A DNA stretch of 64,000 nt, from positions 222,006-286,005 of the IMG/VR virus record IMGVR_UViG_3300020195_000009; one strand, written 5' to 3'. Positions 6,114 through 55,550 of this stretch are shown piece by piece. How positions within the stretch are numbered: position 1 is the stretch's first letter; each line of letters starts with the position of its first letter. The notes below the pieces were generated by a model. The model ran no database searches. It was not told where the DNA came from and saw only the letters and a list, made by a program, of their open reading frames with translations. Position numbers and translations under genes: made by a program.

Positions 6114-6657
6114 ATGAAATTAGACGCAAACCAGGTCTACCCAGGGATCTGGCAAGGCTCAATCCCACCCGAAGGCTACACCCTCCACAAGTTTGGGTTT
6201 CGTGGGCTCGTCCTTTGCGCTCAAGAACACCAACCCAAGACTGAGCGGTTCCCAGGGATCAACGTCATCCACTCCCCCAACGATGACGACTTCACCCGGC
6301 TCCCAACTAGGGAAGAACTACAGATGGCCCTCCAGAGCGCCAGGAAGGTCGCTGCAATGGTCTCGGGGGGGTGAGTCTGTCCTTGTGACCTGCCGGATGG
6401 GAAAGAACCGCTCAGGGCTTGTCAGCGCCTTGGCGCTTCATCTCCTGACCGGCCAAGAGGGGTTGGCTTGTATCCAGCACATCCAAAGTCGACGTAAAGG
6501 CGCCCTTCGGAACTCTGGGTTCAACCAGTGCCTTGTGAAGCTGCAATCAGTCAGCGCGGGGGGTCTCACTGGCAAAGACGTAAGCCGACCCATCCCACTT
6601 GTAGGTGCGAGTAATCGAACCCGCAGGGCCCCCAGCCGAGCCCCTCAGCACGACTGA
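6114..6657 (+). pseudogene. dual-specificity/tyrosine phosphatase split by a frameshift in a G7 run
   Basis: N-half NQVYPGIWQGS in one frame; catalytic VLVTCRMGKNRSG (CX5R) in another; removing one G at 6365-6371 joins them. Confidence 0.7.
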
Positions 6658-6921
6658 CACCTTGAGAATTGACGACGTGGATATCGTGACTCGACCCTCA
6701 CCCGTCCAAACCACCTGCTTTTTCTGGTCCTTCGACACCCGGTAAGCCGTCACATCCGGGGAATAACAAGCACAATCAGGGTCCTCAACCGTGTGGATAC
6801 AGTTGGGGCCAACAAGGGCGTCCCCCACATCACACACGGACTTGGGCTCTGCGGCAGCAAGGCCTGAAACCGAGAGGGTAGCAACCGCGACGAGTCCAGC
6901 GAGGATGTTTCGGAGGCCCAT
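6547..6921 (-). CDS. secreted/periplasmic hypothetical protein
   Basis: Signal-peptide-like N-terminus ending AAA; ATG at +1 of a class I promoter. Confidence 0.6.
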   Translation of the reverse strand: MGLRNILAGLVAVATLSVSGLAAAEPKSVCDVGDALVGPNCIHTVEDPDCACYSPDVTAYRVSKDQKKQVVWTGEGRVTISTSSILKVSVVLRGSAGGPAGSITRTYKWDGSAYVFASETPRAD

Positions 6922-6957
6922 GTATCTAGGACACCCGAAAGTGGGTCTGATTCAACC
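6922..6957 (-). promoter_or_regulatory. class I promoter, leaderless
   Basis: GGTTGAATC-N14-GTGTC-N8-ATG(6921). Confidence 0.75.
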
Positions 6958-7322
6958 AAAATAGACAACTAGGGCTTCTTTTCGAGAGGCCGCTCTGTAG
7001 GTGTAGGGGCACCCTTGTAGAGCCCTGCGCCGGGGGGCAGTCTCTTTTTGATAGCCGGGGGCGGATCACTCTTCACACGATCGATAAACGCCTTCGTAAC
7101 TTCGAGGATCTGCCTAGCCTCCTCGGTGACCGCCTGAATTTGACCCGACTCACGCCGGAAGAGTTTCGGAGCCGTATCGCTCACGGCGTTTGGTTTGACC
7201 TCTTCAGTCCCACCTTCTTGAATTTGGTCAGGTTTGAGCATAAAGAGCCTCGGTGCTGTTCCGCCCATGGTGCTCCTCCTTACCTAACAGGATCGTTCGA
7301 TAAGTCAAAATGAGGGCACCTT

Positions 7323-8001: not shown

Positions 8002-8495
8002 TTACAGTTCGACCTTCTCGATTACATCGACCCAGTGGTCCTTCGTGGCACCCTTGGTGAAGGCCGACACAACCTCGAACACGGTGTCCGAGAAACCACC
8101 CACGTTGAGAATGTTACCGTCCTGATCAGGGACCTGAACGGTACTGTGTGGCGTCAAGTCGATGCAGACCAACTTGGCGTTGGGGCAGCGGCGCTTGAGG
8201 ATGAGCCACTGCTCCATCATCGCCGTTCCACGACCCCCGGCCCCAATAGGGTGCGCCCAGGACTCGTAGTCGGAGACGAAAACCACGAGGTCTACATGAG
8301 CCCGCTCCGCATTGAGAGCCCGGAGCGGCGCATCGCAGTTCGTGGCCCCACCCCGGAACGAAGCGAGCCTCGTAGGCCTCCACACGAGCCGGCAGGTTGC
8401 CTTCGATCGGGAAGACCTCCTCCCCGAACTTCGCCGCCGTCTTCCCAATGAGGTAGGCGTGAAGAGCCGAACGAACCTTGGTCTTGAGGTTGGGG
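8002..8495 (-). pseudogene. Ro60/TROVE-VWA remnant with internal deletions
   Basis: C-terminal GGATNC..L..VDLVVFVSD.ESW..AKLVCIDL..ILNVGGFSD.VF typical of bacterial Ro60; out-of-frame upstream fragment ALHAYLIGK..LPARVEAYEA resembles mid-TROVE. Confidence 0.7.
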
Positions 8496-8518: not shown

Positions 8519-9232
8519 CTAGGCACGCTTTTTCTGACGGCGGCTCGTCCGAGAGGCCACATAGGCCTTCGCAACCCTCTTGAATTTCGGGAACTTCGCC
8601 CCGAAGAGTGAATGTTCTTTCCCAGCCGTCCTGTAGATCGTGTACCCACCCTTCGCGATCGTGAAGGGTTTCTTGAGGACACTCATCTGGTCGAACCGTC
8701 GAAGCGAGTCAGACCCAGGGTCGTTCGAGTCGAACCACTCGGGGAAGAGGAAGTTCGACACGGACACGCTCTTCTTTCCGACCTTGATCGGGTAGGCGTC
8801 CCCCTCGACAGCATCGCAAAGCTCCCAAGCGTGGCTCTTGCCATCCGGGGCATCCCCCCACTTGTTGCAGTTGGGGTCACCCCAAAGCTCCAGGATCTCG
8901 TGGGAGAGGACACAAGAGAGAGAGTTGGGCCCTTCAAACTTGGTGCCTCCGTTGTCGAGGATGACGCCCACGAAGACCTTGCCGTACTCCCTCCCCTCAG
9001 GATCCTCGAAATGGTACCCAAGAGCATCCGCCTCATCCGCTTCGTCAAAGAAGTAGATAGGGCACGCCTCATCCGGCACCTGCCGTGGGTCCTCGTAGAA
9101 GATGACCGGGGCTACCCTAGCATCCCAGGCCGGGGCAGCATGCCGACGCATCTGAGAGGCACACGCCTTCGTCATCAGTAGAACTTCGTCGTTCGTGACC
9201 CTTTTGGACTTGTTTACGATGGCGATGAGCAT
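8519..9232 (-). CDS. putative zincin-like metalloprotease
   Basis: ALGYH, SHEILE, ELCDAVE and VSNFLFPEWF motifs; GGAGG RBS. Confidence 0.55.
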   Translation of the reverse strand: MLIAIVNKSKRVTNDEVLLMTKACASQMRRHAAPAWDARVAPVIFYEDPRQVPDEACPIYFFDEADEADALGYHFEDPEGREYGKVFVGVILDNGGTKFEGPNSLSCVLSHEILELWGDPNCNKWGDAPDGKSHAWELCDAVEGDAYPIKVGKKSVSVSNFLFPEWFDSNDPGSDSLRRFDQMSVLKKPFTIAKGGYTIYRTAGKEHSLFGAKFPKFKRVAKAYVASRTSRRQKKRA

Positions 9233-9266
9233 GCTGGCCTCCGTGGAAGCCAGCGAACAAGTAGGA

Positions 9267-9563
9267 TCACACTGCTACGAAGCTGGGACCCCGGTAGGTC
9301 GCCAGGACTGCACCCGTCTGCTGATCCTTGATGAAAGCCGAGAAGACAACCTGCACCCCGAGGTGCTCATTGCAACCACCCGACTTCGAGGAAGCCTCGA
9401 AGTGCTCGATGTACGCCTTGAGGTTCTCCTCAGTCGGCTTCCCATGTGCCGGGATCTGCCCCTGCTTGCGGGTCCGCCACTCAGCGGGGGTACAACGGGC
9501 CGTCCCGTTGTACCCCGTGATCGTCATCTCCACCGTGACCGGAATCATTCGGCTGCGTCCCAT
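9267..9563 (-). CDS. hypothetical phage protein (leaderless)
   Basis: ATG at +1 of class I promoter. Confidence 0.65.
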   Translation of the reverse strand: MGRSRMIPVTVEMTITGYNGTARCTPAEWRTRKQGQIPAHGKPTEENLKAYIEHFEASSKSGGCNEHLGVQVVFSAFIKDQQTGAVLATYRGPSFVAV

Positions 9564-9599
9564 ACTGAGAGAACACGCAGCTCCCCTCTGGATTCAACT
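9564..9599 (-). promoter_or_regulatory. class I promoter, leaderless
   Basis: AGTTGAATC-N14-GTGTT-N8-ATG(9563). Confidence 0.75.
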
Positions 9600-9608
9600 T
9601 TAATCGTC

Positions 9609-10406
9609 TCATGGGATGAGATATTTGACCCAACCCGAATCCGTACGCTCAGCCAGCCCGAGCGTGATGAAAACCTCGTCCATCTTCAACTCTTGTGCGT
9701 AGAAGAAGCTGTATTTCTTCTTGCTCATCTCGACGTACAGTGTCCTGGCCTCCGTCTTGTCACCCGTCGCCGCCAAGGTGATGAACTTGTCCGCAAAGTC
9801 CTTCTTGATGGCCTCACGCTTGGCCGACAAGGCAGCCTGCTTCGCTTTGGTGGCCGCCACCTTATCGGCCTTTACCTGACGGGCTGCGGCCCGCTCAGCA
9901 GCTCGTACGTCCTTGGCCGCCTTCTCCTCGGCCATACGCTCCTCGATGGTGCGAATGGGGGCGAGTTTCCAAGCCAAGATACGATTCACCAGGCGGAGAA
10001 CTTCGGCCGTGAGCTGGCGAACCATGTACTTGACTTCGTGGGTGGCGCTCTCAAGCTGACGGGTCCAGGTCCAAAGCTCAGTAACGCCGCAGATGTACTC
10101 CGTGGTCTCGATGCTGTAGAAGGAGGCCTTCGACACCGAGAGGTGGGTCACGGCACCGGGGGTCTGGAGCTGAGTAAGGCGCTCCTGCTTGTGTACCAGC
10201 TCCTCTTCGACACTGACCAGATACGACCTCACCAGCTCGCAGGAAACCTCGTAGGGGTCCGCCTTGACGCCGTAGCAGTCACCGACGATCTCCCCGTGAC
10301 CCGGCCTCTTGTAGCCGTGGTGGACAAGCTTACCGTCGTGGAGCTTCTGCTCCTGCTCGCAAATCTGGCAGCAACCGAGGAACCGAGTCTTGAGGTTGGC
10401 GTCCAT
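9609..10406 (-). CDS. hypothetical protein with N-terminal CxxC/HHG..C putative zinc site
   Basis: CQIC..LVHHGY..GDC; ATG at +1 of class I promoter. Confidence 0.65.
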   Translation of the reverse strand: MDANLKTRFLGCCQICEQEQKLHDGKLVHHGYKRPGHGEIVGDCYGVKADPYEVSCELVRSYLVSVEEELVHKQERLTQLQTPGAVTHLSVSKASFYSIETTEYICGVTELWTWTRQLESATHEVKYMVRQLTAEVLRLVNRILAWKLAPIRTIEERMAEEKAAKDVRAAERAAARQVKADKVAATKAKQAALSAKREAIKKDFADKFITLAATGDKTEARTLYVEMSKKKYSFFYAQELKMDEVFITLGLAERTDSGWVKYLIP

Positions 10407-10442
10407 ACTGGAGGAACACAGGAGGAGGCCAAGGATTCAACC
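10407..10442 (-). promoter_or_regulatory. class I promoter, leaderless
   Basis: GGTTGAATC-N14-GTGTT-N8-ATG(10406). Confidence 0.75.
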
Positions 10443-10499
10443 CAAAAGATAAGAAATCGGAAACCTTCTGTTACTACAAGGAAATACAGAAATCGACAC

Positions 10500-10532
10500 G
10501 AGAGGGTTGATTCTGAGACCCCCTCCCGTGTT
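10500..10532 (+). repeat. 33-bp perfect direct repeat, copy 1 (class I promoter)
   Basis: GAGAGGGTTGATTCTGAGACCCCCTCCCGTGTT identical to 11983-12015. Confidence 0.9.
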
Positions 10533-10624
10533 TACCTAGCAACGAAGCTCTACTCGAAATCGCTACGGAACCTGTCAGATTCGGCAAGTCGGTGGCGTCC
10601 AACGGTGTACTAGGAGAGACCCCC

Positions 10625-11971
10625 ATGGCGAAGATTCAGCTCACGATCAAGACCGACTACCTCCCCAAGTGGGGCGCCTATGAGGGTGTGAGGGAGTTGG
10701 TCCAGAACGCCAAAGATGCCGAAGTCGAGCATTCGGCGCCCATGACCATCGACTGGTACAACGATACGCTCCGTATCGAGAACGAGGGGACGACGTTGCC
10801 TCTCAAGGCTCTCCTCCTGGGCCACACGACCAAGCTCGGGAACTCCGAGATGATCGGCAAGTTCGGAGAGGGTCTCAAGCTCGGGGTCCTGGCTCTCGTT
10901 CGAGCCGGCCACGATGTCAAGATTCGTAACGGTGAGGAGGTCTGGATCCCCACCATCGAGCGTGACGATCGCTTCGATGATAACGTCCTCACATTCAAGA
11001 TCGAAGGGGGCCGGGAGCAGCGAAACCGCGTCCGTATCGAGATCGGCGGCATCTCGAAAGAGGCTTGGGCAAAGATGAAGGATTGCTTCCTGTTCATCAA
11101 CAAGCCGAAGAAGAACGACTCGATCACGACCTACAATGGGTCGCTTCTCCTCGGTCCCGACTTCAAGGGTCGGATCTACGTGAAGGGCATCTTCGTCCAG
11201 ACCGACCCGGACGCCGCATTCGGCTACGATCTCAAGGAGGTCGAGCTGGACCGTGATCGCAAGATGGTCGAGTCGTGGAACCTCAAGTACCACACCCGCA
11301 AGGTCTTCCTAACCGCGATGAACAAGAAGGAAGAGCTGTTTGCACAGTTCACGGAGATGTTGACCACTCCGACGACGGAGACCGAGAGCATGGACGCCAG
11401 CTCGGTTACCTACGACATCACGAAGGAAGTCGCCGACAAGGTGGCCGACCATTTCCGCAAGGTCCACGGGCCGGACGCTGTCCCGGTCGCCAGCCTTGCA
11501 GACAGCAAGGACATCGAGCACTTCGGTAAGAAGGGGATCGTTGTCTCCAAGCCCCTCGGGGCCGTCCTCGCCAAGTCCCTCGGTGATGCCCTCACCGTCA
11601 AGGAGAACCTCAAGAAGGAGACCCTCAAACTCTATAGCTGGAGCGACCTTACCGAGATCGAACAGTCGGTCATCACAGGCGCCGTCGCCATGATCAACGA
11701 AGTCGAAACCTTCCGGTTGGACGACATCGACGTCGTGGACTTCCGCTCGGTTACGATGGACGGCCAGTTCAAGGACAGCCGAGTCCTCATCGCCAAGAAG
11801 CACTTGGCCAGCGCTGACGAGACCCTCAAGGTTCTTGTCCACGAAGTCGCACATCGCCTCGGGTCCGATGGCTCCAAGAGTCACGTCCAGGCCATCGAGG
11901 AGCTTTGGACGGGGATCGTCCGTAACCTCAGGAATCACCTGGGGGATCGGCTGTCTCGAATCGCCAACTGA
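10625..11971 (+). CDS. GHKL (Hsp90/MORC-like) ATPase fused to a C-terminal HExxH metallopeptidase-like domain
   Basis: RELVQNAKDA (N box), GKFGEGLK (G box), VLVHEVAH; GGAGA RBS. Confidence 0.75.
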   Translation: MAKIQLTIKTDYLPKWGAYEGVRELVQNAKDAEVEHSAPMTIDWYNDTLRIENEGTTLPLKALLLGHTTKLGNSEMIGKFGEGLKLGVLALVRAGHDVKIRNGEEVWIPTIERDDRFDDNVLTFKIEGGREQRNRVRIEIGGISKEAWAKMKDCFLFINKPKKNDSITTYNGSLLLGPDFKGRIYVKGIFVQTDPDAAFGYDLKEVELDRDRKMVESWNLKYHTRKVFLTAMNKKEELFAQFTEMLTTPTTETESMDASSVTYDITKEVADKVADHFRKVHGPDAVPVASLADSKDIEHFGKKGIVVSKPLGAVLAKSLGDALTVKENLKKETLKLYSWSDLTEIEQSVITGAVAMINEVETFRLDDIDVVDFRSVTMDGQFKDSRVLIAKKHLASADETLKVLVHEVAHRLGSDGSKSHVQAIEELWTGIVRNLRNHLGDRLSRIAN

Positions 11972-11982
11972 AAATTCAACGG

Positions 11983-12023
11983 GAGAGGGTTGATTCTGAG
12001 ACCCCCTCCCGTGTTCCCTCAAC
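11983..12023 (+). promoter_or_regulatory. class I promoter / 33-bp repeat copy 2, leaderless
   Basis: GGTTGATTC-N14-GTGTT-N8-ATG(12024). Confidence 0.8.
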
Positions 12024-12236
12024 ATGGACACCCAGACGATGATCACGCGCAACCAGGACGGCTCGCTCCCCCTCGTGCGACTCTCGCCCGAGACTTCGGG
12101 CGACTGCCCTTGCGGGTGCGGCGACGCCGCCTTCGCCTTCGGTATGGACGGCTTCGACGGCTACGTGGATGCGGCTCCCGCGTGCGCGCAGGACGCCGGG
12201 GAAGAGGCGCTCTTGTCCTCGGTGGAGTTCCCGTGA
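12024..12236 (+). CDS. small Cys-containing hypothetical protein
   Basis: ATG at +1; CPCGC motif. Confidence 0.55.
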   Translation: MDTQTMITRNQDGSLPLVRLSPETSGDCPCGCGDAAFAFGMDGFDGYVDAAPACAQDAGEEALLSSVEFP

Positions 12237-12562
12237 GCAACTGCGTCGTCACTCGTCGCGAGGCTCTCGAAAACTTCGTGAAGCTCGCTCAGGCTCTCGT
12301 CGACAACCACATGTCGTCCACCTTTGCGCTCAACAGGCGCAAGGTGCTCACGGTGGAATCGGGTCGTCGATACGCCCGCATCGTCATCCAGAGCGAAGGT
12401 GACGTTCTATCCCGCTCTGCTTTCTGTTTCGTCGACATGACGAACGGTGACGTGCTCAAGCCTGAGGGCTGGAAGAAGCCGGCCAAGCACGCACGTGGGA
12501 GCATTTTCGCTTCCAACCCGGTCGAGGGTATCGGCCCCTACGGCGCCCTGAGTCTCAAATGA
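12233..12562 (+). CDS. conserved phage hypothetical protein
   Basis: GTG overlaps upstream stop; GRRYARI..FVD..GDVLKP..WKKPAKHARG motif that I recognise from large phages. Confidence 0.6.
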   Translation: MSNCVVTRREALENFVKLAQALVDNHMSSTFALNRRKVLTVESGRRYARIVIQSEGDVLSRSAFCFVDMTNGDVLKPEGWKKPAKHARGSIFASNPVEGIGPYGALSLK

Positions 12563-12712
12563 AACGCTGCACTAGGTGTGGGAAAAAAGATGCGAAGGTC
12601 ACGGTTACGAACCGTGACTGCGCCGATGTCGTTCATTGGTGGCACTCCAAGTGCTGGGCTCAGATGAAGGCGTGGTTGGCTTGCAAGCCGATCCCAAAAT
12701 AAAACACTCCCT

Positions 12713-12748
12713 GGTTGATTCCCCAAGCCCCTCACGTGTTCTTTCAAC
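12713..12748 (+). promoter_or_regulatory. class I promoter, leaderless
   Basis: GGTTGATTC-N14-GTGTT-N8-ATG(12749). Confidence 0.8.
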
Positions 12749-13099
12749 ATGAGTCACCGAACCTCCAGTGTCAGTATCACCTTCCACGTTGAACGAGACG
12801 GGGTAGAGGTCGATCTTCGGATTGCCGGTCGGTACACCCCCGGCCTTGAAGGACGGACCTTCGGCCCCCCCGAGAACTGCTACCCCTCGGAGCCCGCTGA
12901 GGCCGAGATTGAGGCCCTCTGGATGGGTGGCCACCCTTGGGCCGGTACGCTGACGGACGAGGAAGAGGAAGCCGTCATCGAGGCCCTCATCGCTTCGGCT
13001 GAGGAGTCCATCTCGGACGGCCCGGACCCGGACGACGACTACGACTCACGGTGCGACCGTGATGACGACTACCGCGAAGACTCCCGAGAGGACTACTGA
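12749..13099 (+). CDS. acidic phage hypothetical protein
   Basis: GPPENCYP motif, D/E-rich tail; ATG at +1. Confidence 0.6.
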   Translation: MSHRTSSVSITFHVERDGVEVDLRIAGRYTPGLEGRTFGPPENCYPSEPAEAEIEALWMGGHPWAGTLTDEEEEAVIEALIASAEESISDGPDPDDDYDSRCDRDDDYREDSREDY

Positions 13100-13100
13100 G

Positions 13101-14576
13101 ATGGACTGGTTCACCGTAGATAAGGCCGGGCTCGCCAAGCTCTTGGACAAGAAGGGCAAGGCCTTCGCTGTCTTCGAGCTGATTCAGAACGGCTGGGATA
13201 CCTCAGCGAAGAACGTTCAAGTGACCATCACTCCGGTCCCAGGGAAGGCCCGCGTCACCCTCAAGGTCGAGGATGATGACCCGGAAGGCTTCAAAAACCT
13301 CACCCACGCTTTCACTCTCTTTGCCGAGAGTGAGAAGAAAGGCGATCCCTCCAAGCGAGGTCGATTCAATCTCGGGGAGAAACTCGTCCTGGCTCTCTGC
13401 GATGAAGCCTCCGTGATCTCCACGAAGGGCTCCGTGGTCTTCGACGCTGAGGGCCGCCACGAGTCCCGTAGGAGGCGGGACACGGGCTCCGTGTTTCAAG
13501 GGGTCATGCGGATGACCCGCGAGGAGCTGGCCGAAGTCGAGGCCGCCGTCCAACGACTCATTCCGCCGATCGGGTGTGGGACGGTCTTTAACGGAACGGC
13601 CCTCCCCTCACGGGAGATCCTCCGTAAGTTCGAGGCCACCCTCCCCACGGACATCAGTGATGAAGAGGGTTACCTTCGTCGGACCCAGCGTAAGACCGAG
13701 GTGACCGTTCATGAGGTCAAAGCCGGCGAGACCGCCACCCTCTACGAGATGGGGATCCCTGTTGTAGAGCTGTCCGGGGGTGAGCCGTGGCATGTGAACG
13801 TCCACCAAAAGATCCCCTTGAACGTGGACCGAGATAACGTCACCCCGGCGTATCTCCAGACGATCCGGGTCCTCCTCGCCAACGAGATGAGCGGCGCCAT
13901 CACGAAGGAAGGCGCCGATCAGGTATGGGTCAACGCTGCCACGGAGGATGAGCGTATCGACTCCCTCGCCGTGGAGAAAGTGCTTGATCATCGCTTCGGG
14001 AAGAAGCGAGCGATCTTTGACGCCAGTGATCCCGAGGCCAACAAGCAGCTCATGAACGAAGGCTTTTCCATCATCCACGGAGGCTCCCTCTCGAAGGGCC
14101 AGTGGAACAACGTGAGGGACGCCGGGCTGGCCATCCCCTCTGGTCAGCTCCGTCCGAGCGGGGTTCAATACGACCCTGACGGGGACCCCGAGAAGATCAT
14201 CCCCGAGTCGGACTACACGTCCGGGATGAGAGAGATCGTAGACTTGTCTAAGGCGCTTGCCAGACTCCTCATCGGTAAAGAGATCGGCGTCAAGCTCGTC
14301 AACGAGCCCATCGCCCTCCCTCATGCTGCATGGTACGGCCATGGCGTCCTCGCCTTCAACATCGGCCGGCTAGGTAAGGCCTGGTTTCACGATGGCATCC
14401 ACCCGAAGCACGTTGAGCTGATCCTCCACGAACTGGCTCACGATCGGGTGAAGGATCATCTTACGTGTGAGTTTGCCGATGAGGTCGGCCGGCTCGGAGT
14501 GAAGCTCGTTCGTCTCGCCCTTGCTGATCCTGGGTTCTTCAAGACCCACAACGTGTTCACTCTGTCGCCCCACTGA
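13101..14576 (+). CDS. GHKL ATPase with C-terminal HExxH domain (second copy of this architecture)
   Basis: FELIQNGWD, VEDDDPEG, GRFNLGEK, ILHELAHD. Confidence 0.75.
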   Translation: MDWFTVDKAGLAKLLDKKGKAFAVFELIQNGWDTSAKNVQVTITPVPGKARVTLKVEDDDPEGFKNLTHAFTLFAESEKKGDPSKRGRFNLGEKLVLALCDEASVISTKGSVVFDAEGRHESRRRRDTGSVFQGVMRMTREELAEVEAAVQRLIPPIGCGTVFNGTALPSREILRKFEATLPTDISDEEGYLRRTQRKTEVTVHEVKAGETATLYEMGIPVVELSGGEPWHVNVHQKIPLNVDRDNVTPAYLQTIRVLLANEMSGAITKEGADQVWVNAATEDERIDSLAVEKVLDHRFGKKRAIFDASDPEANKQLMNEGFSIIHGGSLSKGQWNNVRDAGLAIPSGQLRPSGVQYDPDGDPEKIIPESDYTSGMREIVDLSKALARLLIGKEIGVKLVNEPIALPHAAWYGHGVLAFNIGRLGKAWFHDGIHPKHVELILHELAHDRVKDHLTCEFADEVGRLGVKLVRLALADPGFFKTHNVFTLSPH

Positions 14577-14578
14577 TC

Positions 14579-15694
14579 ATGAAGAAAAGGGACATCCAGG
14601 CGAAGGCTACGATCAAGGTCGGACGAGACGGAAGCGTTTCCGTCTCGTCACCGGATGTCGTTGACCCCCGCGTGCTCATGAAGCTCGGGATGACCGAGAT
14701 GTCCCGGCGTAAGTTCGCTCAGGTCGCCCCCAAGGCTTTCGGGTTCACCCCCGACGTAGCGGACAAGGACGACCTCATGCGGCTCGGGGAGGTTCTCCGA
14801 AAGGAGACCTACCAGCACGGTGGGGATGAGGTTGCCGCCCCGAAGCTTCTTGAATGGGCGAAAGCTCAGGGTGAAGACTTCATGGATTTGTTCCAGGTTG
14901 AACAGAACGCGATCGTCTACTTCGCCGCCGCCCGGTGGGCCGATCAAGCCTTCCCCGTCGTGACGATGGGAGAACGGTTCTGCGCTGCCCTCATGGCAAC
15001 GAAGATCCCGGAGGAGATGCTCGAAGAGATCGAGGCCCCCTGGCATGCGTTCATGATCGAAGTCCCCGGCAACATGCTGAGTGTCTTCGACCCGGACTCC
15101 ATGCGCCGGACAAGCATCGTCCGGATCTTCGTTCACAAGACGATCGATGTCGATGAGCCGTGGCGCTGGGTCGCGATGGGTAAAGATGGCCAGCACGTCT
15201 GGCGCATGGGGTCCTCTTTGAACCTCGTCACTCCAGTCCAATTCCGGAAGCGCGAGACGGTCCCTTACGAGGTCAACAGCGACGACTGGGAAAACGACCT
15301 TCACCGGGACGAGCGGCTCTACGTTCTCGTAGGTCGCCTCATCCTCAACGCCTGTTTGGTCCTTGCCGACCCAGATCAAGTGAAGCCGCTGGGGTCAAGC
15401 CACAAGCGCCACGAGGCCAACAAGGCCCGCCGACCCGGCCCCCCGGAGCAACGCGTTTTCCAGATCGGTCGACCCATCAACCTGGATTGCCGGGATGCCA
15501 TCCGGGAATACGTAGAGGGGGAGCGCTCTGGACACGAGTTGAAAATTCAGGCGCTCATCCGAGGCTACTGGCGCCGGCAACCCTACGGGCCGAAACTCGC
15601 CTTCCGCCGTAGGCAGTGGATTCAACCCTATTGGAGAGGCCCCGAAGACGCCCCCATTCTCATTCGCCCTCACATGATCCCAGAGGACACATGA
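14579..15694 (+). CDS. phage protein with C-terminal RG(H/Y)WR..PYWRGP motif
   Basis: IRGYWRRQPYGP..WIQPYWRGP. Confidence 0.6.
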   Translation: MKKRDIQAKATIKVGRDGSVSVSSPDVVDPRVLMKLGMTEMSRRKFAQVAPKAFGFTPDVADKDDLMRLGEVLRKETYQHGGDEVAAPKLLEWAKAQGEDFMDLFQVEQNAIVYFAAARWADQAFPVVTMGERFCAALMATKIPEEMLEEIEAPWHAFMIEVPGNMLSVFDPDSMRRTSIVRIFVHKTIDVDEPWRWVAMGKDGQHVWRMGSSLNLVTPVQFRKRETVPYEVNSDDWENDLHRDERLYVLVGRLILNACLVLADPDQVKPLGSSHKRHEANKARRPGPPEQRVFQIGRPINLDCRDAIREYVEGERSGHELKIQALIRGYWRRQPYGPKLAFRRRQWIQPYWRGPEDAPILIRPHMIPEDT

Positions 15695-15881: not shown

Positions 15882-16376
15882 ATGAAAGCCAAGCGCCGAG
15901 ACGAGCCCGTCTACAACAAGAAGGAGCGGGAGGAAATCCTCGCCTCCATGGAGAAGGTCCGAACCGCCTTCTACTACCAAGCTGTCCAAACCAAGTGCCA
16001 CCCGTTCATCGAGTTCTGCGGGGTCATGGGGGAGTACGTTACCGTTTGCCGAGAGGCTCACAAGAACGGGATCGACTTCACCCAGGCGAATACTCACTCG
16101 GGACAGGCCCTCCCCATCCAGACCTTCCACGCCAATTACCTGGCGGAGAAGCTTAATTGCATCTACGGGCCGAGCCTCATCCAAGACGAGGCCGTTCGAG
16201 ATGCCTTCATCTCCAGGCTTTTCGACGGACAGTTCAAGCTAGTTCCCGTTGTCGAGAAGAGCGAGTTGGCTGAAAAGGCGGAACGACTCCGGGATCCTAA
16301 CTACGGGTCGATGTCCGGGGAAGAGCAGTGGGCAGACGACAAAGCAAACGGCCTTCTCGATTGGGACGGCCGCTAG
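15882..16376 (+). CDS. conserved hypothetical protein
   Basis: HPFIEFCG..YLAEKL.CIYG block. Confidence 0.55.
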   Translation: MKAKRRDEPVYNKKEREEILASMEKVRTAFYYQAVQTKCHPFIEFCGVMGEYVTVCREAHKNGIDFTQANTHSGQALPIQTFHANYLAEKLNCIYGPSLIQDEAVRDAFISRLFDGQFKLVPVVEKSELAEKAERLRDPNYGSMSGEEQWADDKANGLLDWDGR

Positions 16377-16409
16377 CGTTCACCCCAAACCCGGTGTAGA
16401 GTTCATACA

Positions 16410-16488
16410 CGGGTAAGCCGAGACCTGTCGCCCCACCTCCCCCACACCCCCCTGTGAATGGTTTGGCTGGCGACAGGTTTCGGATCCC
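16410..16488 (+). ncRNA. candidate small RNA or leader: 15-bp stem with C-rich loop
   Basis: CCGAGACCTGTCGCC (16418-32) pairs with GGCGACAGGTTTCGG (16469-83); class II motif at 16391. Confidence 0.5.
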
Positions 16489-16722
16489 TCTCCCCCCATG
16501 CAACAGATCCCCGACTTCCTGATCCCGACAGAAGAGCAGGTTCGTAAGGACCTGGCTTACTACCATGCGAAGGTGGTGTTCTGTTTCCAACGGATGCCAC
16601 GGGACCGGGCTACGACGGCTACCGAACGAACGCGGAAGCTCATCCGCCTCATTAAGAAGACTGCCTTTCTAGCTGGGATGGACATTCGGTAGCGAGTCTT
16701 TCGTTACGGTGTCATCAGGTGC

Positions 16723-17649: not shown

Positions 17650-17880
17650 GATACGCTCGAACCTGGTCTTGTAGGGCTCGGGTGGGGGTGGCACAAAGTA
17701 GACGTAACCTCGACGGGGGCCGCCATTCGGCTCTCGTGCGACAGCTCCAGTGTTGTTGAAGGCGCACAAGGTCGAAGCGACCGATGAGGTCTTGGCTTGA
17801 AGAGCGTGTGATATTTCCGTAGCGCTCTTGCCAGGGTTCCCCCGGACGTAGTTCAAGATCCTGTCTTTGAGCATCTCCAT
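17431..17880 (-). CDS. winged-helix protein carrying KTRFERI; tail runs antisense into the ARH gene
   Basis: ILNYVRGNPGKSATEIS..GYVYF wHTH-like pattern; ATG abuts the tRNA 3' end. Confidence 0.55.
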   Translation of the reverse strand: MEMLKDRILNYVRGNPGKSATEISHALQAKTSSVASTLCAFNNTGAVAREPNGGPRRGYVYFVPPPPEPYKTRFERILAEPDGAASRAASDLQLKPVEVVEVLQTLPPSDGDSIQPVVGSRKRPRNGGRRVSVSASPNRGLNRLLKGLG

Positions 17881-17957
17881 GGTGGTCCCGACGGGATTTG
17901 AACCCGCACCCCGCGAATTTAGAATTCGCTGCTTCAAACCATTTGAGCTTCAGGACC
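17880..17957 (-). tRNA. amber suppressor tRNA (anticodon CUA)
   Basis: Acceptor GGTCCTG/CGGGACC, anticodon arm GCGAA-TT[CTA]AA-TTCGC, T arm GCGGG-TTCAAAT-CCCGT, ends ACCA; atypical A8 and D arm. Confidence 0.8.
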
Positions 17958-19070: not shown

Positions 19071-19103
19071 ACAGATTCTCCACAGCCTGTGGATAGAACG
19101 GGG

Positions 19104-19176
19104 CGCTCCCGGCAGGACTTGAACCTGCGACGTACGGATTTAGAAACCGATGTTCTGCCGACTGAACTACGGGAGC
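19104..19176 (-). tRNA. amber suppressor tRNA (anticodon CUA)
   Basis: GCTCCCG/CGGGAGC acceptor, GTTC/GAAC D stem, loop TT[CTA]AA at canonical spacing (anticodon stem has two T-T mismatches), T arm GCAGG-TTCAAGT-CCTGC, G73, no encoded CCA. Confidence 0.8.
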
Positions 19177-19182
19177 ACACAT

Positions 19183-31096: not shown

Positions 31097-33059
31097 ATGA
31101 CCTACGACGAGATGGCTGTGGAGATTCTGATGGGCCCTGGCTTGGTCAAGACCAAGCAGTCGAAGCTCTCGAAGCTTGCCAAGCAGGCGGCGGCTCGTCT
31201 GGAAAACCGTGTCGAGTGTCCCGAATGTGGACACGAGGGCCCGCACGAGGACAACGGGTGTTCGGGTTCGCAGAAGTCTTACCTCTGCTCCGGCTGCGGT
31301 TGCTGCTTCGATGCGGTGGCGTCGTGAAGGGGTTGGCGAATTTCAGCCGAACGCAGGAGGCCCTCAAAACCTACGACACCGACAAGTCTCGTCGGGACGC
31401 CGTTTGGGGCGCAACCGACACGAACGAGGCTGTCTATGCAGCCCAGGCCGAAGACAAGAAGGCGGCTGACAAGGTTCGTGAGGCTTTCGCCGAGGACACC
31501 AAGAACATCAACAGCCGCGAACAAGCCTTCCTCGTCAACCCAGACGATCCCTGGCTTCGCGGGCTGGTCACCAAGTACGGAGACGAATCATGAGTATTGT
31601 GTACTTTCAAACCGATCACGACGATCGCTGTCACGAGCTAAACGGGGAAACCCCGGCTCGTCTCAAAGACAAGACCCTCATGGGTCTTCTTCAAGACATG
31701 CCTGCCACCGGGGACACCCTGGAGGTTTACCTCGGGACCGACTGGGTGTCCGGTTGGATCCGTGGGGAACCCAACACCTACAAGTTCGAGATCGAATGCG
31801 TGTCGTTCGAGGACGAACGAACCGTCCACGGCGCCATCCACGATGGGCTCATCAAGTACTACAGTGCTCGAAGCAGCCCCCTTCCGTGGCACAAGATCAT
31901 CCCGCCTTCCAAGCAGTGCAACAACCTCCCGGACGAGGTCTACGTGGTCATCGCCAGGGAGGACCGCCAGCCGGACGGCTCCCAGGGTCGGTACACGCTC
32001 GCAACCCGAGCCTTCTTCAAGACTGAAGAGAAAGCCAAAGACTACGCCGTGGGGATCAGCTCCTCTCGGGAACCCCTGGTCATTCCAGGCCGTTTCAATC
32101 AAATGCGAAAGTCTGGTTGATTCCAACAACCCCTCAAGTGTTCTTCTACTATGAACGCCGACCTCATCTTCGTCCTCGCTGTTTCCTTCACGAACGGCAC
32201 GGTCCTGACCGCCAACAACGTTACCGCTGGTAACGGAATGGTGATCGACTGGCGCAACGTGAAGTCCGGTGAGACTGTCGTGTCTGAGGGTGATGCCTAC
32301 GACATGGCTGTCACCTTCGTTGGGCTCGTCGGGTGGGGTGCGGCGGCCATGGCTCTCGATGAGAAGGAGGCCGCATGAACCGCACCGAAGCCTACCAGAA
32401 GGACCGTAAGGGGGACTTCTACGTTGACGACTGCGAGGTCACCGGAGGCCATGGCGTCTTCGGGTCGGAGACCGGCTTCTGTTACGGGTCGTTCTCCGAC
32501 GCCTCCGACGCCTATAGGCTCTGCAACGACCTCATGGACGGAAAGGCCAGGATTCAGTGAGCCACGGGGAGGTCCGCCACCACGGCTTGAAGGAAGAACC
32601 GGACGGCTCCGCTCAGACCATCACCGAGACTTGGTGCAACCATTGCCGGAAGTGGATCCCTACCAATGGGGTTCTCGGCCCTCTCACTTTCATGGCGAAG
32701 CACCGAGACGGAGACTGTCAGCAGTCATGAGCCTTACCGAGCAAGAGATCCAAGACAGCATCCTCCGGTCCCAACGGGACGTCGCCCTTCTCCTCAAAGA
32801 AGCCAAAGCCAAGCTCACTTACGTGGAGAAGCTCGTCTCTGAGGGTCAGTGTGTTCTTCTTCGGTCCGATATTCCGATCGCTGAGCTAACGGCCATCCTT
32901 TGCAAATTTGACGCGATCGAAACCTGTCGGGAGGTCCTCCGCAAAGTCAAATCGGAGCGAAGCCGCAGGCAAGCTAAAGCCAGGGAGGGTGGTCGATGTA
33001 GGTTCAACCGCATCTCTCGGGGCAAAGTCCTGAAGGAAGAAAATTCAAAGTCTGGTTGA
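31097..33059 (+). other. small hypothetical genes (31097-31327 zinc ribbon, 31324-31593, 31590-32120, 32151-32378, 32375-32560, 32727-33059)
   Basis: Coupled ORFs downstream of class I promoters. Confidence 0.55.
32115..32150 (+). promoter_or_regulatory. class I promoter, leaderless; supplies upstream stop
   Basis: GGTTGATTC-N14-GTGTT-N8-ATG(32151). Confidence 0.8.
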
Positions 33060-33088
33060 TTCCAACCCAACCCAAGTGTTCTTCCAAC
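33054..33088 (+). promoter_or_regulatory. class I promoter, leaderless; supplies upstream stop
   Basis: GGTTGATTC-N13-GTGTT-N8-ATG(33089). Confidence 0.8.
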
Positions 33089-54096: not shown

Positions 54097-54132
54097 AGTT
54101 GATTCAGGGCACCCCTGCCGTGTTCTCCAGGG
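54097..54132 (+). promoter_or_regulatory. class I promoter, leaderless, driving the recombinase
   Basis: AGTTGATTC-N14-GTGTT-N8-ATG(54133). Confidence 0.75.
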
Positions 54133-54969
54133 ATGGACCGTGACCTCTCAGGTGCATCGAATGACGCAGAACTCATGCAGCTCTGGTTACAAGGGAGACC
54201 TGAGAGCACCATGAGAGTGTACGAGCCTGTAGCTCAGGCCTTCATGGCCGCTCTCCCCCAAGGCTTGCGAGGGGCAACCGTCAAGGACGTGCTCACCTAC
54301 ATTCAAACACACGTGAAGGGTGAGCCTGCTACCAGGGCTAGGTTGGTGAGCACCATCAAGAGCCTGCTCTCATGGGCCTGGAGGACGGGCTATACAACCG
54401 TCAACGTAGGTAAGGCTATTAGGTGCGTACGGGTGCCCAGTACCCTACACAAGAAGCTGTTAGATGAAGGTCAGATACAAGGGCTATGCCGGGCCGCAAG
54501 CGGCCGTGACCATGCCCTTGTTGTTCTTCTGTACGTGAGCGGTCTTCGTATCAGCGAGGCCTGTGGCCTTCTCGGGTCCGACTTGAGGGGATGTCATGTG
54601 ACGGTCCTTGGTAAGGGCACCAAGACCCGAACCGTCCTGATCCCCCAGGCAGTAGCCGACCTTCTCATGACCCTTACCAAGGGGCACCAGGTTGACCCGA
54701 GTAAGCCGCTCTTCTGTTCCCGGTGGGGGAGGCGCCCCCTGGGCGTCCGGGCCGCTAGGGAGGCTATCTACAAGGCGGCATCAAAGGTCGGCCTGGACGA
54801 CCTGTCGCCTCACTGGCTCCGGCACGCTCATGCGACCCATGCCATGGACCGGGGGGCTCCCCTCCACGTCGTCCAACAGGGCCTTGGTCACGCCTCCGTG
54901 GCAACCACCTCGAAGTACCTCCACGTGAAGCCGAGCGTAGGCGCTTCGCAGTGGCTCGCTCCGGTGTAG
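54133..54969 (+). CDS. XerC/D-like tyrosine recombinase
   Basis: SGLRISE, GKGTKTR, PHWLRH, LGHASVATTSKYLH. Confidence 0.92.
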   Translation: MDRDLSGASNDAELMQLWLQGRPESTMRVYEPVAQAFMAALPQGLRGATVKDVLTYIQTHVKGEPATRARLVSTIKSLLSWAWRTGYTTVNVGKAIRCVRVPSTLHKKLLDEGQIQGLCRAASGRDHALVVLLYVSGLRISEACGLLGSDLRGCHVTVLGKGTKTRTVLIPQAVADLLMTLTKGHQVDPSKPLFCSRWGRRPLGVRAAREAIYKAASKVGLDDLSPHWLRHAHATHAMDRGAPLHVVQQGLGHASVATTSKYLHVKPSVGASQWLAPV

Positions 54970-54993
54970 AGTAGGTAGCTCCTTCGGGAGTAA

Positions 54994-55050
54994 GAAGCCC
55001 GCTGTCGTGACCTTGCCCCCCCGAGTGTCCGCAGCGGGCTTCGCTATTTT
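54994..55050 (+). terminator. terminator-like stem (possibly part of a small RNA)
   Basis: GAAGCCCGCTG/CAGCGGGCTTC followed by TATTTT. Confidence 0.55.
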
Positions 55051-55052
55051 CG

Positions 55053-55087
55053 AGTTGAATCCCGAGCGTCTCAGGTGTTCCTGAAAC
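55053..55087 (+). promoter_or_regulatory. class I promoter firing into the 158-nt element
   Basis: AGTTGAATC-N13-GTGTT-N8-GAAGCGGA(55088). Confidence 0.75.
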
Positions 55088-55245
55088 GAAGCGGACGGTA
55101 GGAAAGCTCTCAGAGAGGCTTGACCGGACGGAGTAGGGACGCTTCGGGGAGATCCGTCCGGGACGCCGGATTCTGAACGGATCTCCCCGAAGCCCGGACT
55201 ACTTCGTCTGGGTCTCTCCCGTTTCGGGAGGGGGCCATCCGCTTC
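55088..55245. ncRNA. 158-nt highly paired four-way-junction element, predicted sense and antisense RNAs
   Basis: Terminal IR GAAGCGGA(C/T)GG; perfect 17-bp helix 55141-57/55177-93; 13-bp helix 55124-36/55199-211. Confidence 0.75.
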
Positions 55246-55280
55246 TTCTGGTAAACACAGAGCTTCGCTCGGAATCAACC
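55246..55280 (-). promoter_or_regulatory. class I promoter firing into the same element from the other end
   Basis: GGTTGATTC-N13-GTGTT-N8-GAAGCGGA(55245). Confidence 0.75.
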
Positions 55281-55434
55281 CAGAAATGAGAGAAATTCGA
55301 GCGTAGCGAGCCTGCCCCAAAGGGTGCCCTTCCTGTAGGGCGCGAAGCTCGAAAACCTCTCATTTCCAGGGCCTTTCCCACGTGGTAGCTAGGCAACCGA
55401 AAACGTGACTTTTCGGATCTAGTGCCCAAAAAGG

Positions 55435-55469
55435 GGTTGAATCCGAGCGTCCTCGGGTGTTCCTAGATC
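55435..55469 (+). promoter_or_regulatory. class I promoter, leaderless
   Basis: GGTTGAATC-N13-GTGTT-N8-ATG(55470). Confidence 0.75.
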
Positions 55470-55550
55470 ATGAGCAAGACCCGATTCGACCGGATTCTGG
55501 CCCTCATCGGGCTACCGCCCCAGAACCTCCGAACCAAGGAGGGGCGTAGG
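55470..55550 (+). CDS. 26-aa microprotein MSKTRFDRILAPHRATAPEPPNQGGA
   Basis: ATG at +1 of a class I promoter; carries the shared motif; below the ORF-track cutoff. Confidence 0.55.

What the first reader, a model, noticed from the sequence alone, without database searches (positions are those of the whole stretch)
10500..12015. GHKL gene bracketed by a perfect 33-bp promoter repeat: promoter-bounded cassette
Seen: the two promoter copies flanking 10625..11971 are identical over 33 bp, including the otherwise variable spacer. Similarly 32108-32127 equals 33047-33066 (20 bp). Established: promoter-containing repeats mediate module shuffling in T4-type phages. Inference: genes enter or leave as promoter-bounded cassettes by recombination, possibly aided by the tyrosine recombinase.
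Basis: partly seen in the sequence, partly recalled or inferred. Interest (0 to 1): 0.65.

Follow-up and report, generated by a model that had tools for sequence, protein, structure and literature searches.

The report
Twin promoter copies flanking GHKL gene
Two identical 33-base copies of a huge phage's own promoter-like signal do flank a conserved ATPase gene, but that gene is kept in all 10 related sequences examined rather than hopping in and out; the identity is best explained by one copy overwriting the other, in a region where neighbouring genes really are swapped at such signals.

Summary
Window 10500-10532 and 11983-12015 are identical (33/33), and 32108-32127 equals 33047-33066 (20/20).

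The repeats belong to a 22-copy promoter-like family (RGTTGAWTC, 13-15 nt, GTGTTC, 7 nt, ATG). It is concentrated in the last ~70 kb of a 286-kb huge-phage contig. In 17 of 22 copies the ATG sits at a fixed distance, which suggests leaderless genes.

The GHKL gene is not a come-and-go cassette:
- It has over 770 homologues and is present in all 10 relative loci examined.
- Two close relatives in other metagenomes keep it.
- The source run shows no empty site.

The downstream copy doubles as a stem-loop that follows this gene in relatives too. The upstream copy has upstream-type flanks around a downstream-type core. I therefore read the identity as a short gene-conversion tract.

The wider idea is partly borne out:
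- A relative lacks exactly one promoter-to-promoter unit (843 nt) to the left of the gene.
- The 725-nt unit to its right is missing in two relatives.
- The GHKL gene has a different ancestry from both of its flanks (Fisher p 5e-14).

No evidence involves the tyrosine recombinase. The closest analogue is the PeSL elements of T4-like phages.

The parts
10490..10532 (+). Promoter-like copy 1, with the exact 33-bp core at 10500-10532. The -35-like TTGATT is at 10507-10512 and GTGTT at 10528-10532. A weaker stem-loop spans 10495-10532 (-14.9 kcal/mol). It has no leaderless ATG and is followed by a leader.
10533..10624 (+). 92-nt leader of GHKL1, with a Shine-Dalgarno GGAGAG. The words CCTGTCAGAT and CGGTGTAnnAGGAGA are conserved in the relatives L001, L005, L018 and L024.
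10625..11971 (+). GHKL1: 448 aa, with an Hsp90-like GHKL ATPase N-terminal and middle part and a conserved C-terminal HExxH (H406, E407, H410). It matches phrog_6077. It is present in all relative loci examined.
11973..12026 (+). Promoter-like copy 2, with the exact core at 11983-12015. A stem-loop at 11979-12012 (-21.5 kcal/mol) starts 8 nt after the GHKL1 stop. GTGTT is at 12011-12015 and the leaderless ATG at 12024.
12024..12236 (+). 70-aa ORF with no homologue in any relative locus. It lies on a ~230-nt stretch (12033-12262) that is absent from relatives X2 and X3. In those relatives the leaderless ATG opens the DUF7717 frame directly.
12233..12562 (+). DUF7717 gene (Pfam E 4e-13; profile positions 23-97 of 117, so the N-terminus is missing). 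It is the orthologue of the gene that follows GHKL1 in L001 and L024, and is absent from L003 and L005.
12559..12702 (+). 47-aa ORF that closes the 725-nt unit between copies 2 and 3.
12698..12751 (+). Promoter-like copy 3 (65% identical to copy 1 over 43 nt, no stem-loop), with a leaderless ATG at 12749. By position it corresponds to the single element between GHKL1 and the 116-aa gene homologue in L003 and L005.
12749..13099 (+). 116-aa gene (weak YuA_Gp49 and phrog_6858 matches). It is conserved in relatives.
13059..14576 (+). GHKL2: 505 aa, HATPase_c_3 (E 2.3e-6), with a C-terminal HELAH. It is a distant paralogue of GHKL1 and is conserved next to it in relatives.
9609..10406 (-). 265-aa accessory gene with no Pfam family and no homologue in any relative locus. 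L003 carries a non-homologous 259-aa gene in the same slot. The slot is empty in L001, L005 and X3.
10404..10442 (-). Minus-strand promoter-like copy heading the 265-aa gene (TTGAAT from 10440, leaderless ATG at 10406).
9561..9599 (-). Minus-strand promoter-like copy heading the 98-aa gene (TTGAAT from 9597, ATG at 9563). It lies 843 nt from the copy at 10440, which equals the net deletion in X3.
32108..32127 (+). First member of the exact 20-bp pair (promoter-like copy with TTGATT at 32117).
33047..33066 (+). Second member of the exact 20-bp pair (promoter-like copy with TTGATT at 33056).
54133..54969 (+). Tyrosine recombinase (Phage_integrase, E 5e-30). It is itself headed by a promoter-like copy at 54099. 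No link to the repeats was found.

Best explanation
The two 33-bp copies are members of a phage-specific, promoter-like family with the layout: A/T-rich stretch, RGTTGAWTC, 13-15 nt C-rich spacer, GTGTTC, 7 nt, ATG. The family heads mostly leaderless genes in the accessory, early-looking right end of a huge-phage genome of at least 286 kb.

Copy 1 drives the conserved GHKL1 gene through a 92-nt leader. Copy 2 is a composite element. Its stem-loop closes the GHKL1 transcription unit, and its promoter restarts transcription for the next gene.

GHKL1 is a fixed, vertically kept gene of this phage clade, not a gain/loss cassette. The perfect identity arose when a short tract of the downstream element (33 to ~40 bp) was copied over the upstream promoter. 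That is gene conversion between two related elements 1.48 kb apart during the intense recombination of phage replication.

The same elements mark the edges of modules that differ between relatives, so they behave like the PeSL elements of T4-like phages.

Shown: the repeat, the family, the fixed ATG distance, the conserved stem-loop position, the conservation of GHKL1, the indels and the mosaic ancestry. Inferred: promoter and terminator activity, leaderless translation, and the direction and mechanism of the conversion.
For: Family:
- There are 22 copies against 0.75 expected by chance, 20 of them between 214 and 277 kb of the contig.
- In 17 of 22 copies an ATG lies exactly 13 nt after the G of GTGTT and opens an ORF of 43-278 aa.
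- The upstream 28 nt are 56% A+T against 43% for the genome.

Stem-loop:
- Strong hairpins occur only in copies 2 (-21.5) and 1 (-14.9), with one further moderate fold at 55437 (-13.9).
- A hairpin directly after the GHKL1 stop is present in L001 (-32.5, z -4.6), L005 (-22.6, z -5.0), L024 (-31.4, z -5.3) and L003 (-17.2). The stem sequences differ between these loci.
- In the relatives' upstream regions the most stable fold lies elsewhere, not over the promoter-like element.

Chimeric copy 1:
- Its flanks match the upstream type. AAATCGACAC resembles L001_up and L022_up, and GTGTTTACC resembles GTGTTTAAG in L003_up.
- Its core matches the downstream type seen in L003_dn.
- Relatives have both elements, but the two share only 10-14 bp.
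- Copy 1 has no + strand gene upstream to terminate.

GHKL1 is fixed:
- At least 772 homologues were found, many on contigs of 280-600 kb.
- It is present in all 10 relative loci.
- An X2 contig is colinear over 9200-12032.
- No X1 joint was found, and unitig depths are 80.5 / 85.5 / 77.2.
Against: - No RNA data exist, so promoter, terminator and leaderless status rest on sequence pattern alone.
- The -10-like word is not sigma-70-like: a consensus scan finds none of the copies.
- The stem-loops lack a T-run: the terminator scan does not call them.
- L001_up also carries CTGAGAACCC in its spacer. A similar spacer may therefore be old at both positions, which would fit long-term constraint rather than one recent conversion.
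- The de Bruijn contigs of the source run cannot by themselves tell the integrated arrangement from an empty site plus a circle at equal depth, and contigs drop rare variants.
Confidence: 0.6

Rival explanations
1. GHKL1 is a mobile, promoter-bounded cassette that excises as a 1483-bp circle and re-inserts by recombination between the repeats, possibly catalysed by the tyrosine recombinase.
For: Direct 33-bp repeats flank the gene. PeSL-flanked genes in T4-like phages form mini-circles (PMC2839356). The synteny around GHKL1 breaks on both sides in more distant relatives: in L018, L020 and L026 the DUF7717/GHKL2 module is inverted, and L024-L027 have other neighbours. GHKL1 has a different ancestry from both flanks. 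A tyrosine recombinase is encoded in the window.
Against: GHKL1 is never absent in 10 relative loci or in X2 and X3. The source run shows no empty-site joint, and depth over the gene is not reduced. Relatives carry both elements without extended identity, so the arrangement is ancestral rather than the scar of an insertion. The discordant ancestry fits replacement of one allele by another, not gain and loss. The recombinase gene lies 42 kb away. The 33-mer has 7-9-bp arms around a 13-nt centre, unlike known core sites; that comparison rests on my own knowledge and was not tested.
Confidence: 0.1
2. The identity is kept by selection. The 33-mer, including its spacer and imperfect palindrome, is a shared operator or structured site that puts GHKL1 and the downstream genes under one regulator.
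For: Spacer words recur across distant relatives at both positions: CTGAGA(A/C)CCC in L001_up, and CCTGACCCCCTCCCG in L003_dn. The block has sharp edges. The two flanked transcription units carry functionally linked genes, GHKL1 and GHKL2.
Against: In L001, L003 and L005 the two elements share only their core words, 10-14 bp. The X2 contig runs through both copies without breaking, whereas the X1 contigs break exactly at the repeat. This suggests that the copies in the ~97% relative are not identical over 31 bp or more (inference from how k=31 contigs behave). No candidate regulator was identified.
Confidence: 0.2
3. The identity is a by-product of the recombination event that brought an L001/L024-like GHKL1-DUF7717 module into an L003-like backbone. 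The crossovers would have lain within promoter elements, and heteroduplex repair would have homogenised them.
For: Informative sites show the mosaic. GHKL1 groups the window with L001 (54 against 29; quartet 21:2:8, spread over residues 22-441). The 237-aa gene (4:45), GHKL2 (23:85) and the AcrVA2-like gene (9:96; quartet 2:37:2) group it with L003. Fisher p is 5e-14. DUF7717 is shared with L001 and L024 but is absent from L003 and L005. Copy 2 joins an L003_dn-like hairpin to an L024-like gene start.
Against: AU topology tests are not significant (p 0.076-0.24). Breakpoints are resolved only to intervals of about 1.06 kb (9563-10625) and 1.09 kb (11971-13059). Simple reciprocal crossovers swap segments and do not homogenise them, so conversion is still needed. 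The groupings were chosen after the identities had been seen.
Confidence: 0.15
4. Assembly artefact: the repeat, or the placement of the 1.5-kb segment between two copies, was created by the assembler.
For: The Logan unitigs of the source run break at the repeat. The 33-nt unitig has depth 128 rather than about 160.
Against: The unitig graph reproduces both junctions exactly (10379-10529, 10503-12012, 11986-15100). X2 and six assembled relatives from other samples show the same order: flank, GHKL1, downstream genes.
Confidence: 0.02

Closest known systems
PeSL (promoter-early stem-loop) elements of T4-like phages (Arbiol et al. 2010, PMC2839356; Comeau et al. 2014, PMC4122927)
   Same: Both are repeated intergenic composite elements, with an A/T-rich stretch that often holds the upstream stop codon, a -35-like box, sometimes a G/C-rich stem-loop overlapping the promoter, and then the next gene's start. 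Both cluster in a plastic region full of small unknown genes. Both flank units that differ between close relatives. In RB49 and phi1, PeSLs also border a conserved gene (g43) on either side.
   Different: The -10 position holds GTGTTC rather than a sigma-70 consensus, and this word changes between related phages. There is no Shine-Dalgarno: the ATG sits 7 nt after the motif, which suggests leaderless genes. Only 2-3 of 22 copies have a stem-loop. The conserved span is about 45 nt rather than about 100. The genome is 57% G+C and comes from a huge phage in a microbial mat. No mini-circle has been seen.
Morons of lambdoid phages (a gene with its own promoter and terminator inserted between two genes)
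   Same: The 265-aa gene with its own promoter copy, and the 725-nt DUF7717 unit, are extra transcription units set between conserved genes.
   Different: Here the bounding elements belong to one sequence family shared across the region. GHKL1 itself is not extra DNA. This comparison rests on my own knowledge of morons and no paper was read for it.
Integron gene cassettes (attC hairpins recombined by a tyrosine recombinase)
   Same: A gene lies between two hairpin-forming direct repeats, and a tyrosine recombinase is encoded in the same genome.
   Different: The repeats carry promoter-like boxes, whereas integron cassettes are usually promoterless. Most family copies do not fold. The recombinase gene lies 42 kb away and has no array next to it. 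No cassette array is present.
Hsp90 / MORC-type GHKL ATPases
   Same: GHKL1 has the N-box (E24, N28, D31) and a glycine-rich box (G78-G83), all invariant in 36 homologues. Its model matches Hsp90/TRAP1 N-terminal and middle domains.
   Different: GHKL1 is only 448 aa and has a C-terminal HExxH domain in place of the Hsp90 C-terminal dimerisation domain. TM-scores are only 0.3-0.38 and sequence identity 10-13%. No sequence match to any solved structure was found.

Membership tests
PeSL-type composite promoter/terminator element | Sigma-70-like promoter with consensus -35 and -10 boxes | tested here: not met
   The -35-like TTGAWT is present in all 22 copies. The -10 position holds GTGTTC, and the sigma-70 consensus scan of 9300-13200 calls none of the copies.
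PeSL-type composite promoter/terminator element | Stable stem-loop within or next to the promoter | tested here: inconclusive
   Met for copy 2 (-21.5), copy 1 (-14.9) and one other (55437, -13.9). The other 19 copies fold at -4 to -10 kcal/mol. It is met at the position after GHKL1 in L001, L003, L005 and L024.
PeSL-type composite promoter/terminator element | [quoted passage not shown] | tested here: met
   56% A+T against 43% for the genome. The GHKL1 stop lies 1 nt before the 43-nt element, and the stop of the 47-aa ORF lies inside copy 3.
PeSL-type composite promoter/terminator element | Shine-Dalgarno and start codon at the 3' end | tested here: not met
   The start codon is at a fixed 13 nt from the G of GTGTT in 17 of 22 copies, which leaves no room for a Shine-Dalgarno. 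Only copy 1 is followed by a leader with GGAGAG.
PeSL-type composite promoter/terminator element | Indels and replacements between close relatives bounded by the elements | tested here: inconclusive
   Bounded by elements: the net 843-nt difference in X3, and window stretches 9571/9591-10482/10555 and 11963/12095-12757 against L003 and L005. Not bounded: the right end at 12263/12287, 14207-14913, 6547-7004, 8574-8985 and 16014-16700. Enrichment cannot be separated from the fact that both promoters and indel edges lie at gene junctions.
PeSL-type composite promoter/terminator element | Mini-circles formed by exchange between neighbouring elements | tested here: inconclusive
   The contigs of the source run show no joint, but contigs drop rare forms and break at the repeat.
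PeSL-type composite promoter/terminator element | Demonstrated promoter and terminator activity | not testable with these tools
   No RNA run holds the sequence.
GHKL (Bergerat-fold) ATPase | Bergerat fold with the N-box Asn/Asp and glycine-rich ATP-lid motifs | tested here: met
   E24, N28, D31, G78, F80, G81, E82 and G83 are invariant in 36 homologues. The model has pLDDT 89.1. There are 135 PDB matches at E <= 0.001, and all of those listed are Hsp90 family. Pfam-A gives no hit for GHKL1 itself. The paralogue GHKL2 hits HATPase_c_3.
Integron-like cassette system | Array of promoterless cassettes ending in attC hairpins, next to an integrase gene with attI and Pc | tested here: not met
   The elements carry promoter-like boxes and most do not fold. 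The recombinase gene at 54133-54969 is 42 kb away and is itself headed by a family copy.
   PF00589 at E 5.4e-30, residues 110-266, and 106 bits in the genome search. This says nothing about its substrate.

The most novel reading that the evidence does not exclude
A clade of huge phages uses its own class of composite elements as the joints of modular evolution. Each element has a -35-like box, a lineage-specific -10-like word and a leaderless start, sometimes overlaid by the stem-loop that closes the preceding gene. Whole promoter-to-promoter units would be gained, lost, replaced and inverted at these joints, and even a conserved gene (GHKL1, with DUF7717) would be exchanged between lineages there. 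The perfect 33-bp pair would then be a fresh footprint of that recombination. This would be a PeSL-like mechanism evolved outside the T4-like phages, with a different promoter grammar.
Probability: 0.35. Interest if true: 0.55.

Novelty: new variant of a known kind. Interest (0 to 1): 0.4.

Why it matters
Promoter/stem-loop elements as recombination joints have so far been documented for T4-like phages. Finding the same logic with a different, apparently leaderless promoter grammar in an uncultured huge phage would suggest that regulatory cassettes as exchange points are a general solution for keeping swapped genes expressed. The family also gives a ready map of about 22 likely transcription starts in a genome with no experimental data. 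It also suggests that the -10-like word co-evolves with a phage factor. For the specific finding the result is sobering: a perfect repeat around a gene is not evidence that the gene is mobile.

Tried and rejected
- Nucleotide searches of the INPHARED phage set found no near match. The distant search gave one weak match, to GHKL2 only.
- Scans of IMG/VR with the GHKL1 protein, the 28-nt core and the degenerate family pattern gave nothing useful. The pattern scan returned seven single, probably chance, hits.
- The JGI metagenome scan returned the source contig and six relatives at 28-77% identity, with none closer. The X2 and X3 relatives could therefore only be seen through read laying tables, not as sequence.
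- A LAGLIDADG homing-endonuclease reading of the 265-aa gene was considered, because the L003 gene in the same slot has a faint LAGLIDADG_3 hit. It was dropped: the window protein has no Pfam hit even at E 5, and no similarity to the L003 gene.
- The idea that the two GHKL genes are recent duplicates, with the repeat as a duplication scar, was rejected. BLASTP between them gives E 0.27, and they share only the motif boxes.
- Tree topology tests for discordant GHKL1 ancestry were not significant (p 0.076, 0.238, 0.136). The discordance rests on informative-site counts.
- Rfam found only the two tRNAs, and nothing in the GHKL1 leader.
- A crude test for stop-codon recoding, prompted by the CUA tRNAs, was uninformative.
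Full report
CONTEXT

The window is the last 64 kb (222006-286005) of a single 286,005-bp contig. The contig is an IMG/VR virus record, has linear ends, and is rated about 60% complete by CheckV. It has 57% G+C and was assembled from a microbial-mat metagenome. This is therefore a huge phage whose full genome is probably larger. No isolate phage in the INPHARED set resembles it at the DNA level.

THE OBSERVATION

The 33-mer at 10500-10532 recurs exactly at 11983-12015 and nowhere else. No shuffle produced a match. The spacing is 1483 nt. Similarity extends upstream to 43 nt at 91%, and a third, weaker copy sits at 12698-12740. The block has sharp edges: 7/14 matches to the left, 33/33 in the core and 10/28 to the right.

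WHAT THE REPEAT IS

The pattern TTGAWT, 13-18 nt, GTGTT occurs 22 times in the contig against 0.75 expected. Twenty of the copies lie between 214 and 277 kb, and most are on the + strand.
- The family consensus is an A/T-rich stretch (56% A+T against 43% for the genome), RGTTGAWTC, a C-rich spacer, GTGTTC, seven bases, then ATG.
- In 17 of 22 copies an ATG lies exactly 13 nt after the G of GTGTT and opens an ORF of 43-278 aa.
- A box in the -10 position, 7 nt before the start codon and with no room for a Shine-Dalgarno, is the layout of promoters for leaderless mRNAs. That reading is my inference, because no RNA run holds this sequence.
- The -10-like word is not sigma-70-like, and a consensus scan calls none of the copies.
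- The word also differs between related phages while GGTTGA stays constant. It is GTGTTC here, GTGTCTTT in L003, TTCGTCGTAG in L001 and L018, and GATCGTCTA in L005. This hints at a phage-encoded specificity factor. A 435-aa ORF with a weak Sigma70_r2 match exists outside the window.

Among all 231 pairs of copies, the pair around GHKL1 is an outlier. It scores 33/33, against a median of 18/33 and a next best of 26/33.

THE TWO COPIES ARE NOT EQUIVALENT

Copy 2 starts right after the GHKL1 stop, folds into a strong stem-loop (11979-12012, -21.5 kcal/mol) and ends in a leaderless ATG at 12024. Copy 1 lies in a divergent intergenic region. It folds less well (-14.9) and is followed by a 92-nt leader with a Shine-Dalgarno before the GHKL1 ATG.

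In the relatives L001, L003, L005 and L024, whose GHKL1 is 70-76% identical, a stem-loop also begins 5-8 nt after the GHKL1 stop and overlaps a GGTTGA box and a leaderless start. The stem sequences differ between phages (-17 to -32.5 kcal/mol; z down to -5.3). That position is therefore a conserved composite 'end of GHKL1 / start of next gene' element. The relatives also have a promoter-like element upstream of GHKL1, with the same AAATCGAC word and a conserved leader. In those upstream regions the most stable fold lies elsewhere, and the element shares only 10-14 bp with the downstream one.

In the window, copy 1 has upstream-type flanks. AAATCGACAC resembles L001_up and L022_up, and GTGTTTACC resembles GTGTTTAAG in L003_up. 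Its 33-bp core, however, is of the downstream type and closely resembles L003_dn. A chimera of this kind, carrying hairpin arms that have no job at that site, is what a short gene-conversion tract from copy 2 into copy 1 would leave. A weaker point is that the X2 contig runs through both copies whereas the X1 contigs break at them. This suggests that the ~97% relative does not have 31 or more identical bases.

IS GHKL1 A CASSETTE THAT COMES AND GOES?

No.
- The protein has at least 772 homologues, many on contigs of 280-600 kb.
- Its model (pLDDT 89.1) matches Hsp90/TRAP1, and the GHKL boxes plus a C-terminal HExxH are invariant or nearly so.
- It is present in all ten relative loci fetched.
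- In L001, L003, L005 and L024 it heads the same gene series: GHKL1, optionally DUF7717, the 116-aa gene homologue, then GHKL2. An AcrVA2-like gene follows in L001, L003 and L005; in L024 it lies on the opposite strand.
- In the source run the unitigs reproduce both junctions, and there is no joint from 10499 to 12016. The depth over the gene (85.5) is not below that of the flanks (80.5 and 77.2).
- A contig of the sediment relative X2 is colinear over 9200-12032.
- Contigs cannot exclude rare circles.

WHAT DOES VARY

1. Relative X3 skips 9579-10481 (903 nt) with 60 nt in its place, a net loss of 843 nt. This is exactly the distance between the two minus-strand family copies at 9597 and 10440. 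The unit lost is the 265-aa gene plus one promoter copy. That gene has no homologue in any relative locus. L003 has an unrelated 259-aa gene in the slot, and the slot is empty in L001 and L005.
2. The 725-nt unit between copies 2 and 3 holds the 70-aa ORF, DUF7717 and a 47-aa ORF. It has no counterpart in L003 or L005, where a single element joins GHKL1 to the 116-aa gene homologue.
3. X2 and X3 lack about 230-250 nt (12033/12039 to 12262/12286). In them the leaderless ATG opens DUF7717 directly. In the window the extra DNA creates the 70-aa ORF and truncates the N-terminus of DUF7717. The right end of this indel is not at a motif.
4. Other differences are far from any copy: 14207-14913 in X2, and 6547-7004, 8574-8985 and 16014-16700 against L003 or L005.
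5. In L018, L020 and L026 the DUF7717/116-aa/GHKL2 module is inverted relative to GHKL1. GHKL1 keeps its own promoter and leader there.

MOSAIC ANCESTRY

In three-way comparisons, GHKL1 sites group the window with L001 (54 against 29, p 0.008). The 237-aa gene on the left (4:45), GHKL2 (23:85) and the AcrVA2-like gene (9:96) group it with L003. The heterogeneity has p 5e-14. Quartet sites give 21:2:8 for GHKL1, spread over residues 22-441, against 2:37:2 for the AcrVA2-like gene.

AU tests on the small trees are not significant (p 0.076-0.24), and I chose the groupings after seeing the identities. Even so, the counts show at least one ancestry switch between 9563 and 10625 and another between 11971 and 13059. 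Both intervals contain the family copies. A segment carrying GHKL1, and probably DUF7717, has therefore been exchanged between lineages.

VERDICT ON THE INTERPRETATION

The elements do mark module edges, as PeSLs do in T4-like phages (PMC2839356; PMC4122927). However, GHKL1 is replaced allele for allele rather than gained or lost. Not all indels use the elements. Enrichment cannot be separated from the trivial fact that promoters and indel edges both sit at gene junctions. Nothing ties the tyrosine recombinase (54133-54969) to the repeats.

COMPARISON WITH KNOWN SYSTEMS

PeSLs are defined by the following features:
- a sigma-70 consensus promoter;
- an A/T-rich upstream region;
- a stem-loop;
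- a Shine-Dalgarno and start codon;
- clustering in hyperplastic regions;
- association with indels between close relatives;
- mini-circles.

Here the A/T-rich region and the clustering are met. The stem-loop is met in only 2-3 of 22 copies. The sigma-70 -10 box and the Shine-Dalgarno are not met. Indel association is partial, and circles were not seen. I therefore describe this as working like a PeSL, not as a member of that family. I rate it a new variant of a known kind, of moderate interest.

Noticed in passing
window 17880-17957 (-) and 19101-19177 (-): Two tRNA genes with anticodon CUA. ARAGORN labels them Pyl, and Rfam scores them as tRNA at 56 and 64 bits. They look like amber-suppressor tRNAs. 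A crude comparison of stop-to-stop ORF coverage gave no clear sign that TAG is recoded.
   Followed up: partly
window 54970-55470: About 500 nt of non-coding DNA lies directly after the tyrosine recombinase gene. It holds three family copies (55055 +, 55278 -, 55437 +) that share the spacer word CCGAGCG. It also holds a perfect 17-bp hairpin at 55141-55193 and inverted repeats at 55283-55308 / 55341-55366. It could be an attachment or regulatory region, or it could encode small RNAs.
   Followed up: partly
window 8002-8448 (-): Only a C-terminal stump (about 122 aa matched) of the Ro60/vWA-like gene remains here. The gene is 547-560 aa in L001, L003, L005 and L025, so the window has lost most of it.
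   Followed up: partly
window 10533-10624; L001, L005, L018, L024 upstream of GHKL1: The GHKL1 leader keeps two words across relatives, CCTGTCAGAT and CGGTGTAnnAGGAGA next to the start codon. GHKL1 is one of the few genes in the region with a leader and a Shine-Dalgarno. This may be a translational operator. Rfam finds nothing there.
   Followed up: partly
L001, L003, L005, L018, L024 promoter-like elements; contig 208445-209752 (-), outside the window: The -35-like GGTTGA is constant, but the -10-like word is different in each related phage. The contig encodes a 435-aa protein with a weak Sigma70_r2 match (E 3e-4, below the Pfam cut-off). This may reflect co-evolution of promoters with a phage factor.
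   Followed up: partly
window 10625-11971 and 13059-14576: Both GHKL proteins end in a conserved HExxH (HEVAH at 406-410 and HELAH at about 457-461). They are kept as a pair in relatives, close to AcrVA2-like, ADP-ribosyl-glycohydrolase and Ro60-like genes. This looks like an early or counter-defence neighbourhood, and the function of the GHKL-HExxH architecture is unknown.
   Followed up: partly
window 14207-14913; 11963: In relative X2, 705 nt are replaced by 869 other nt at 14207-14913, which covers the end of GHKL2 and the start of the AcrVA2-like gene. X2 also has a 9-nt tandem duplication (CCAACTGAA) at the GHKL1 stop.
   Followed up: no
window 10308 and 10408: Source-run unitigs end here in Nextera adapter letters. 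This is a library artefact, not biology.
   Followed up: no
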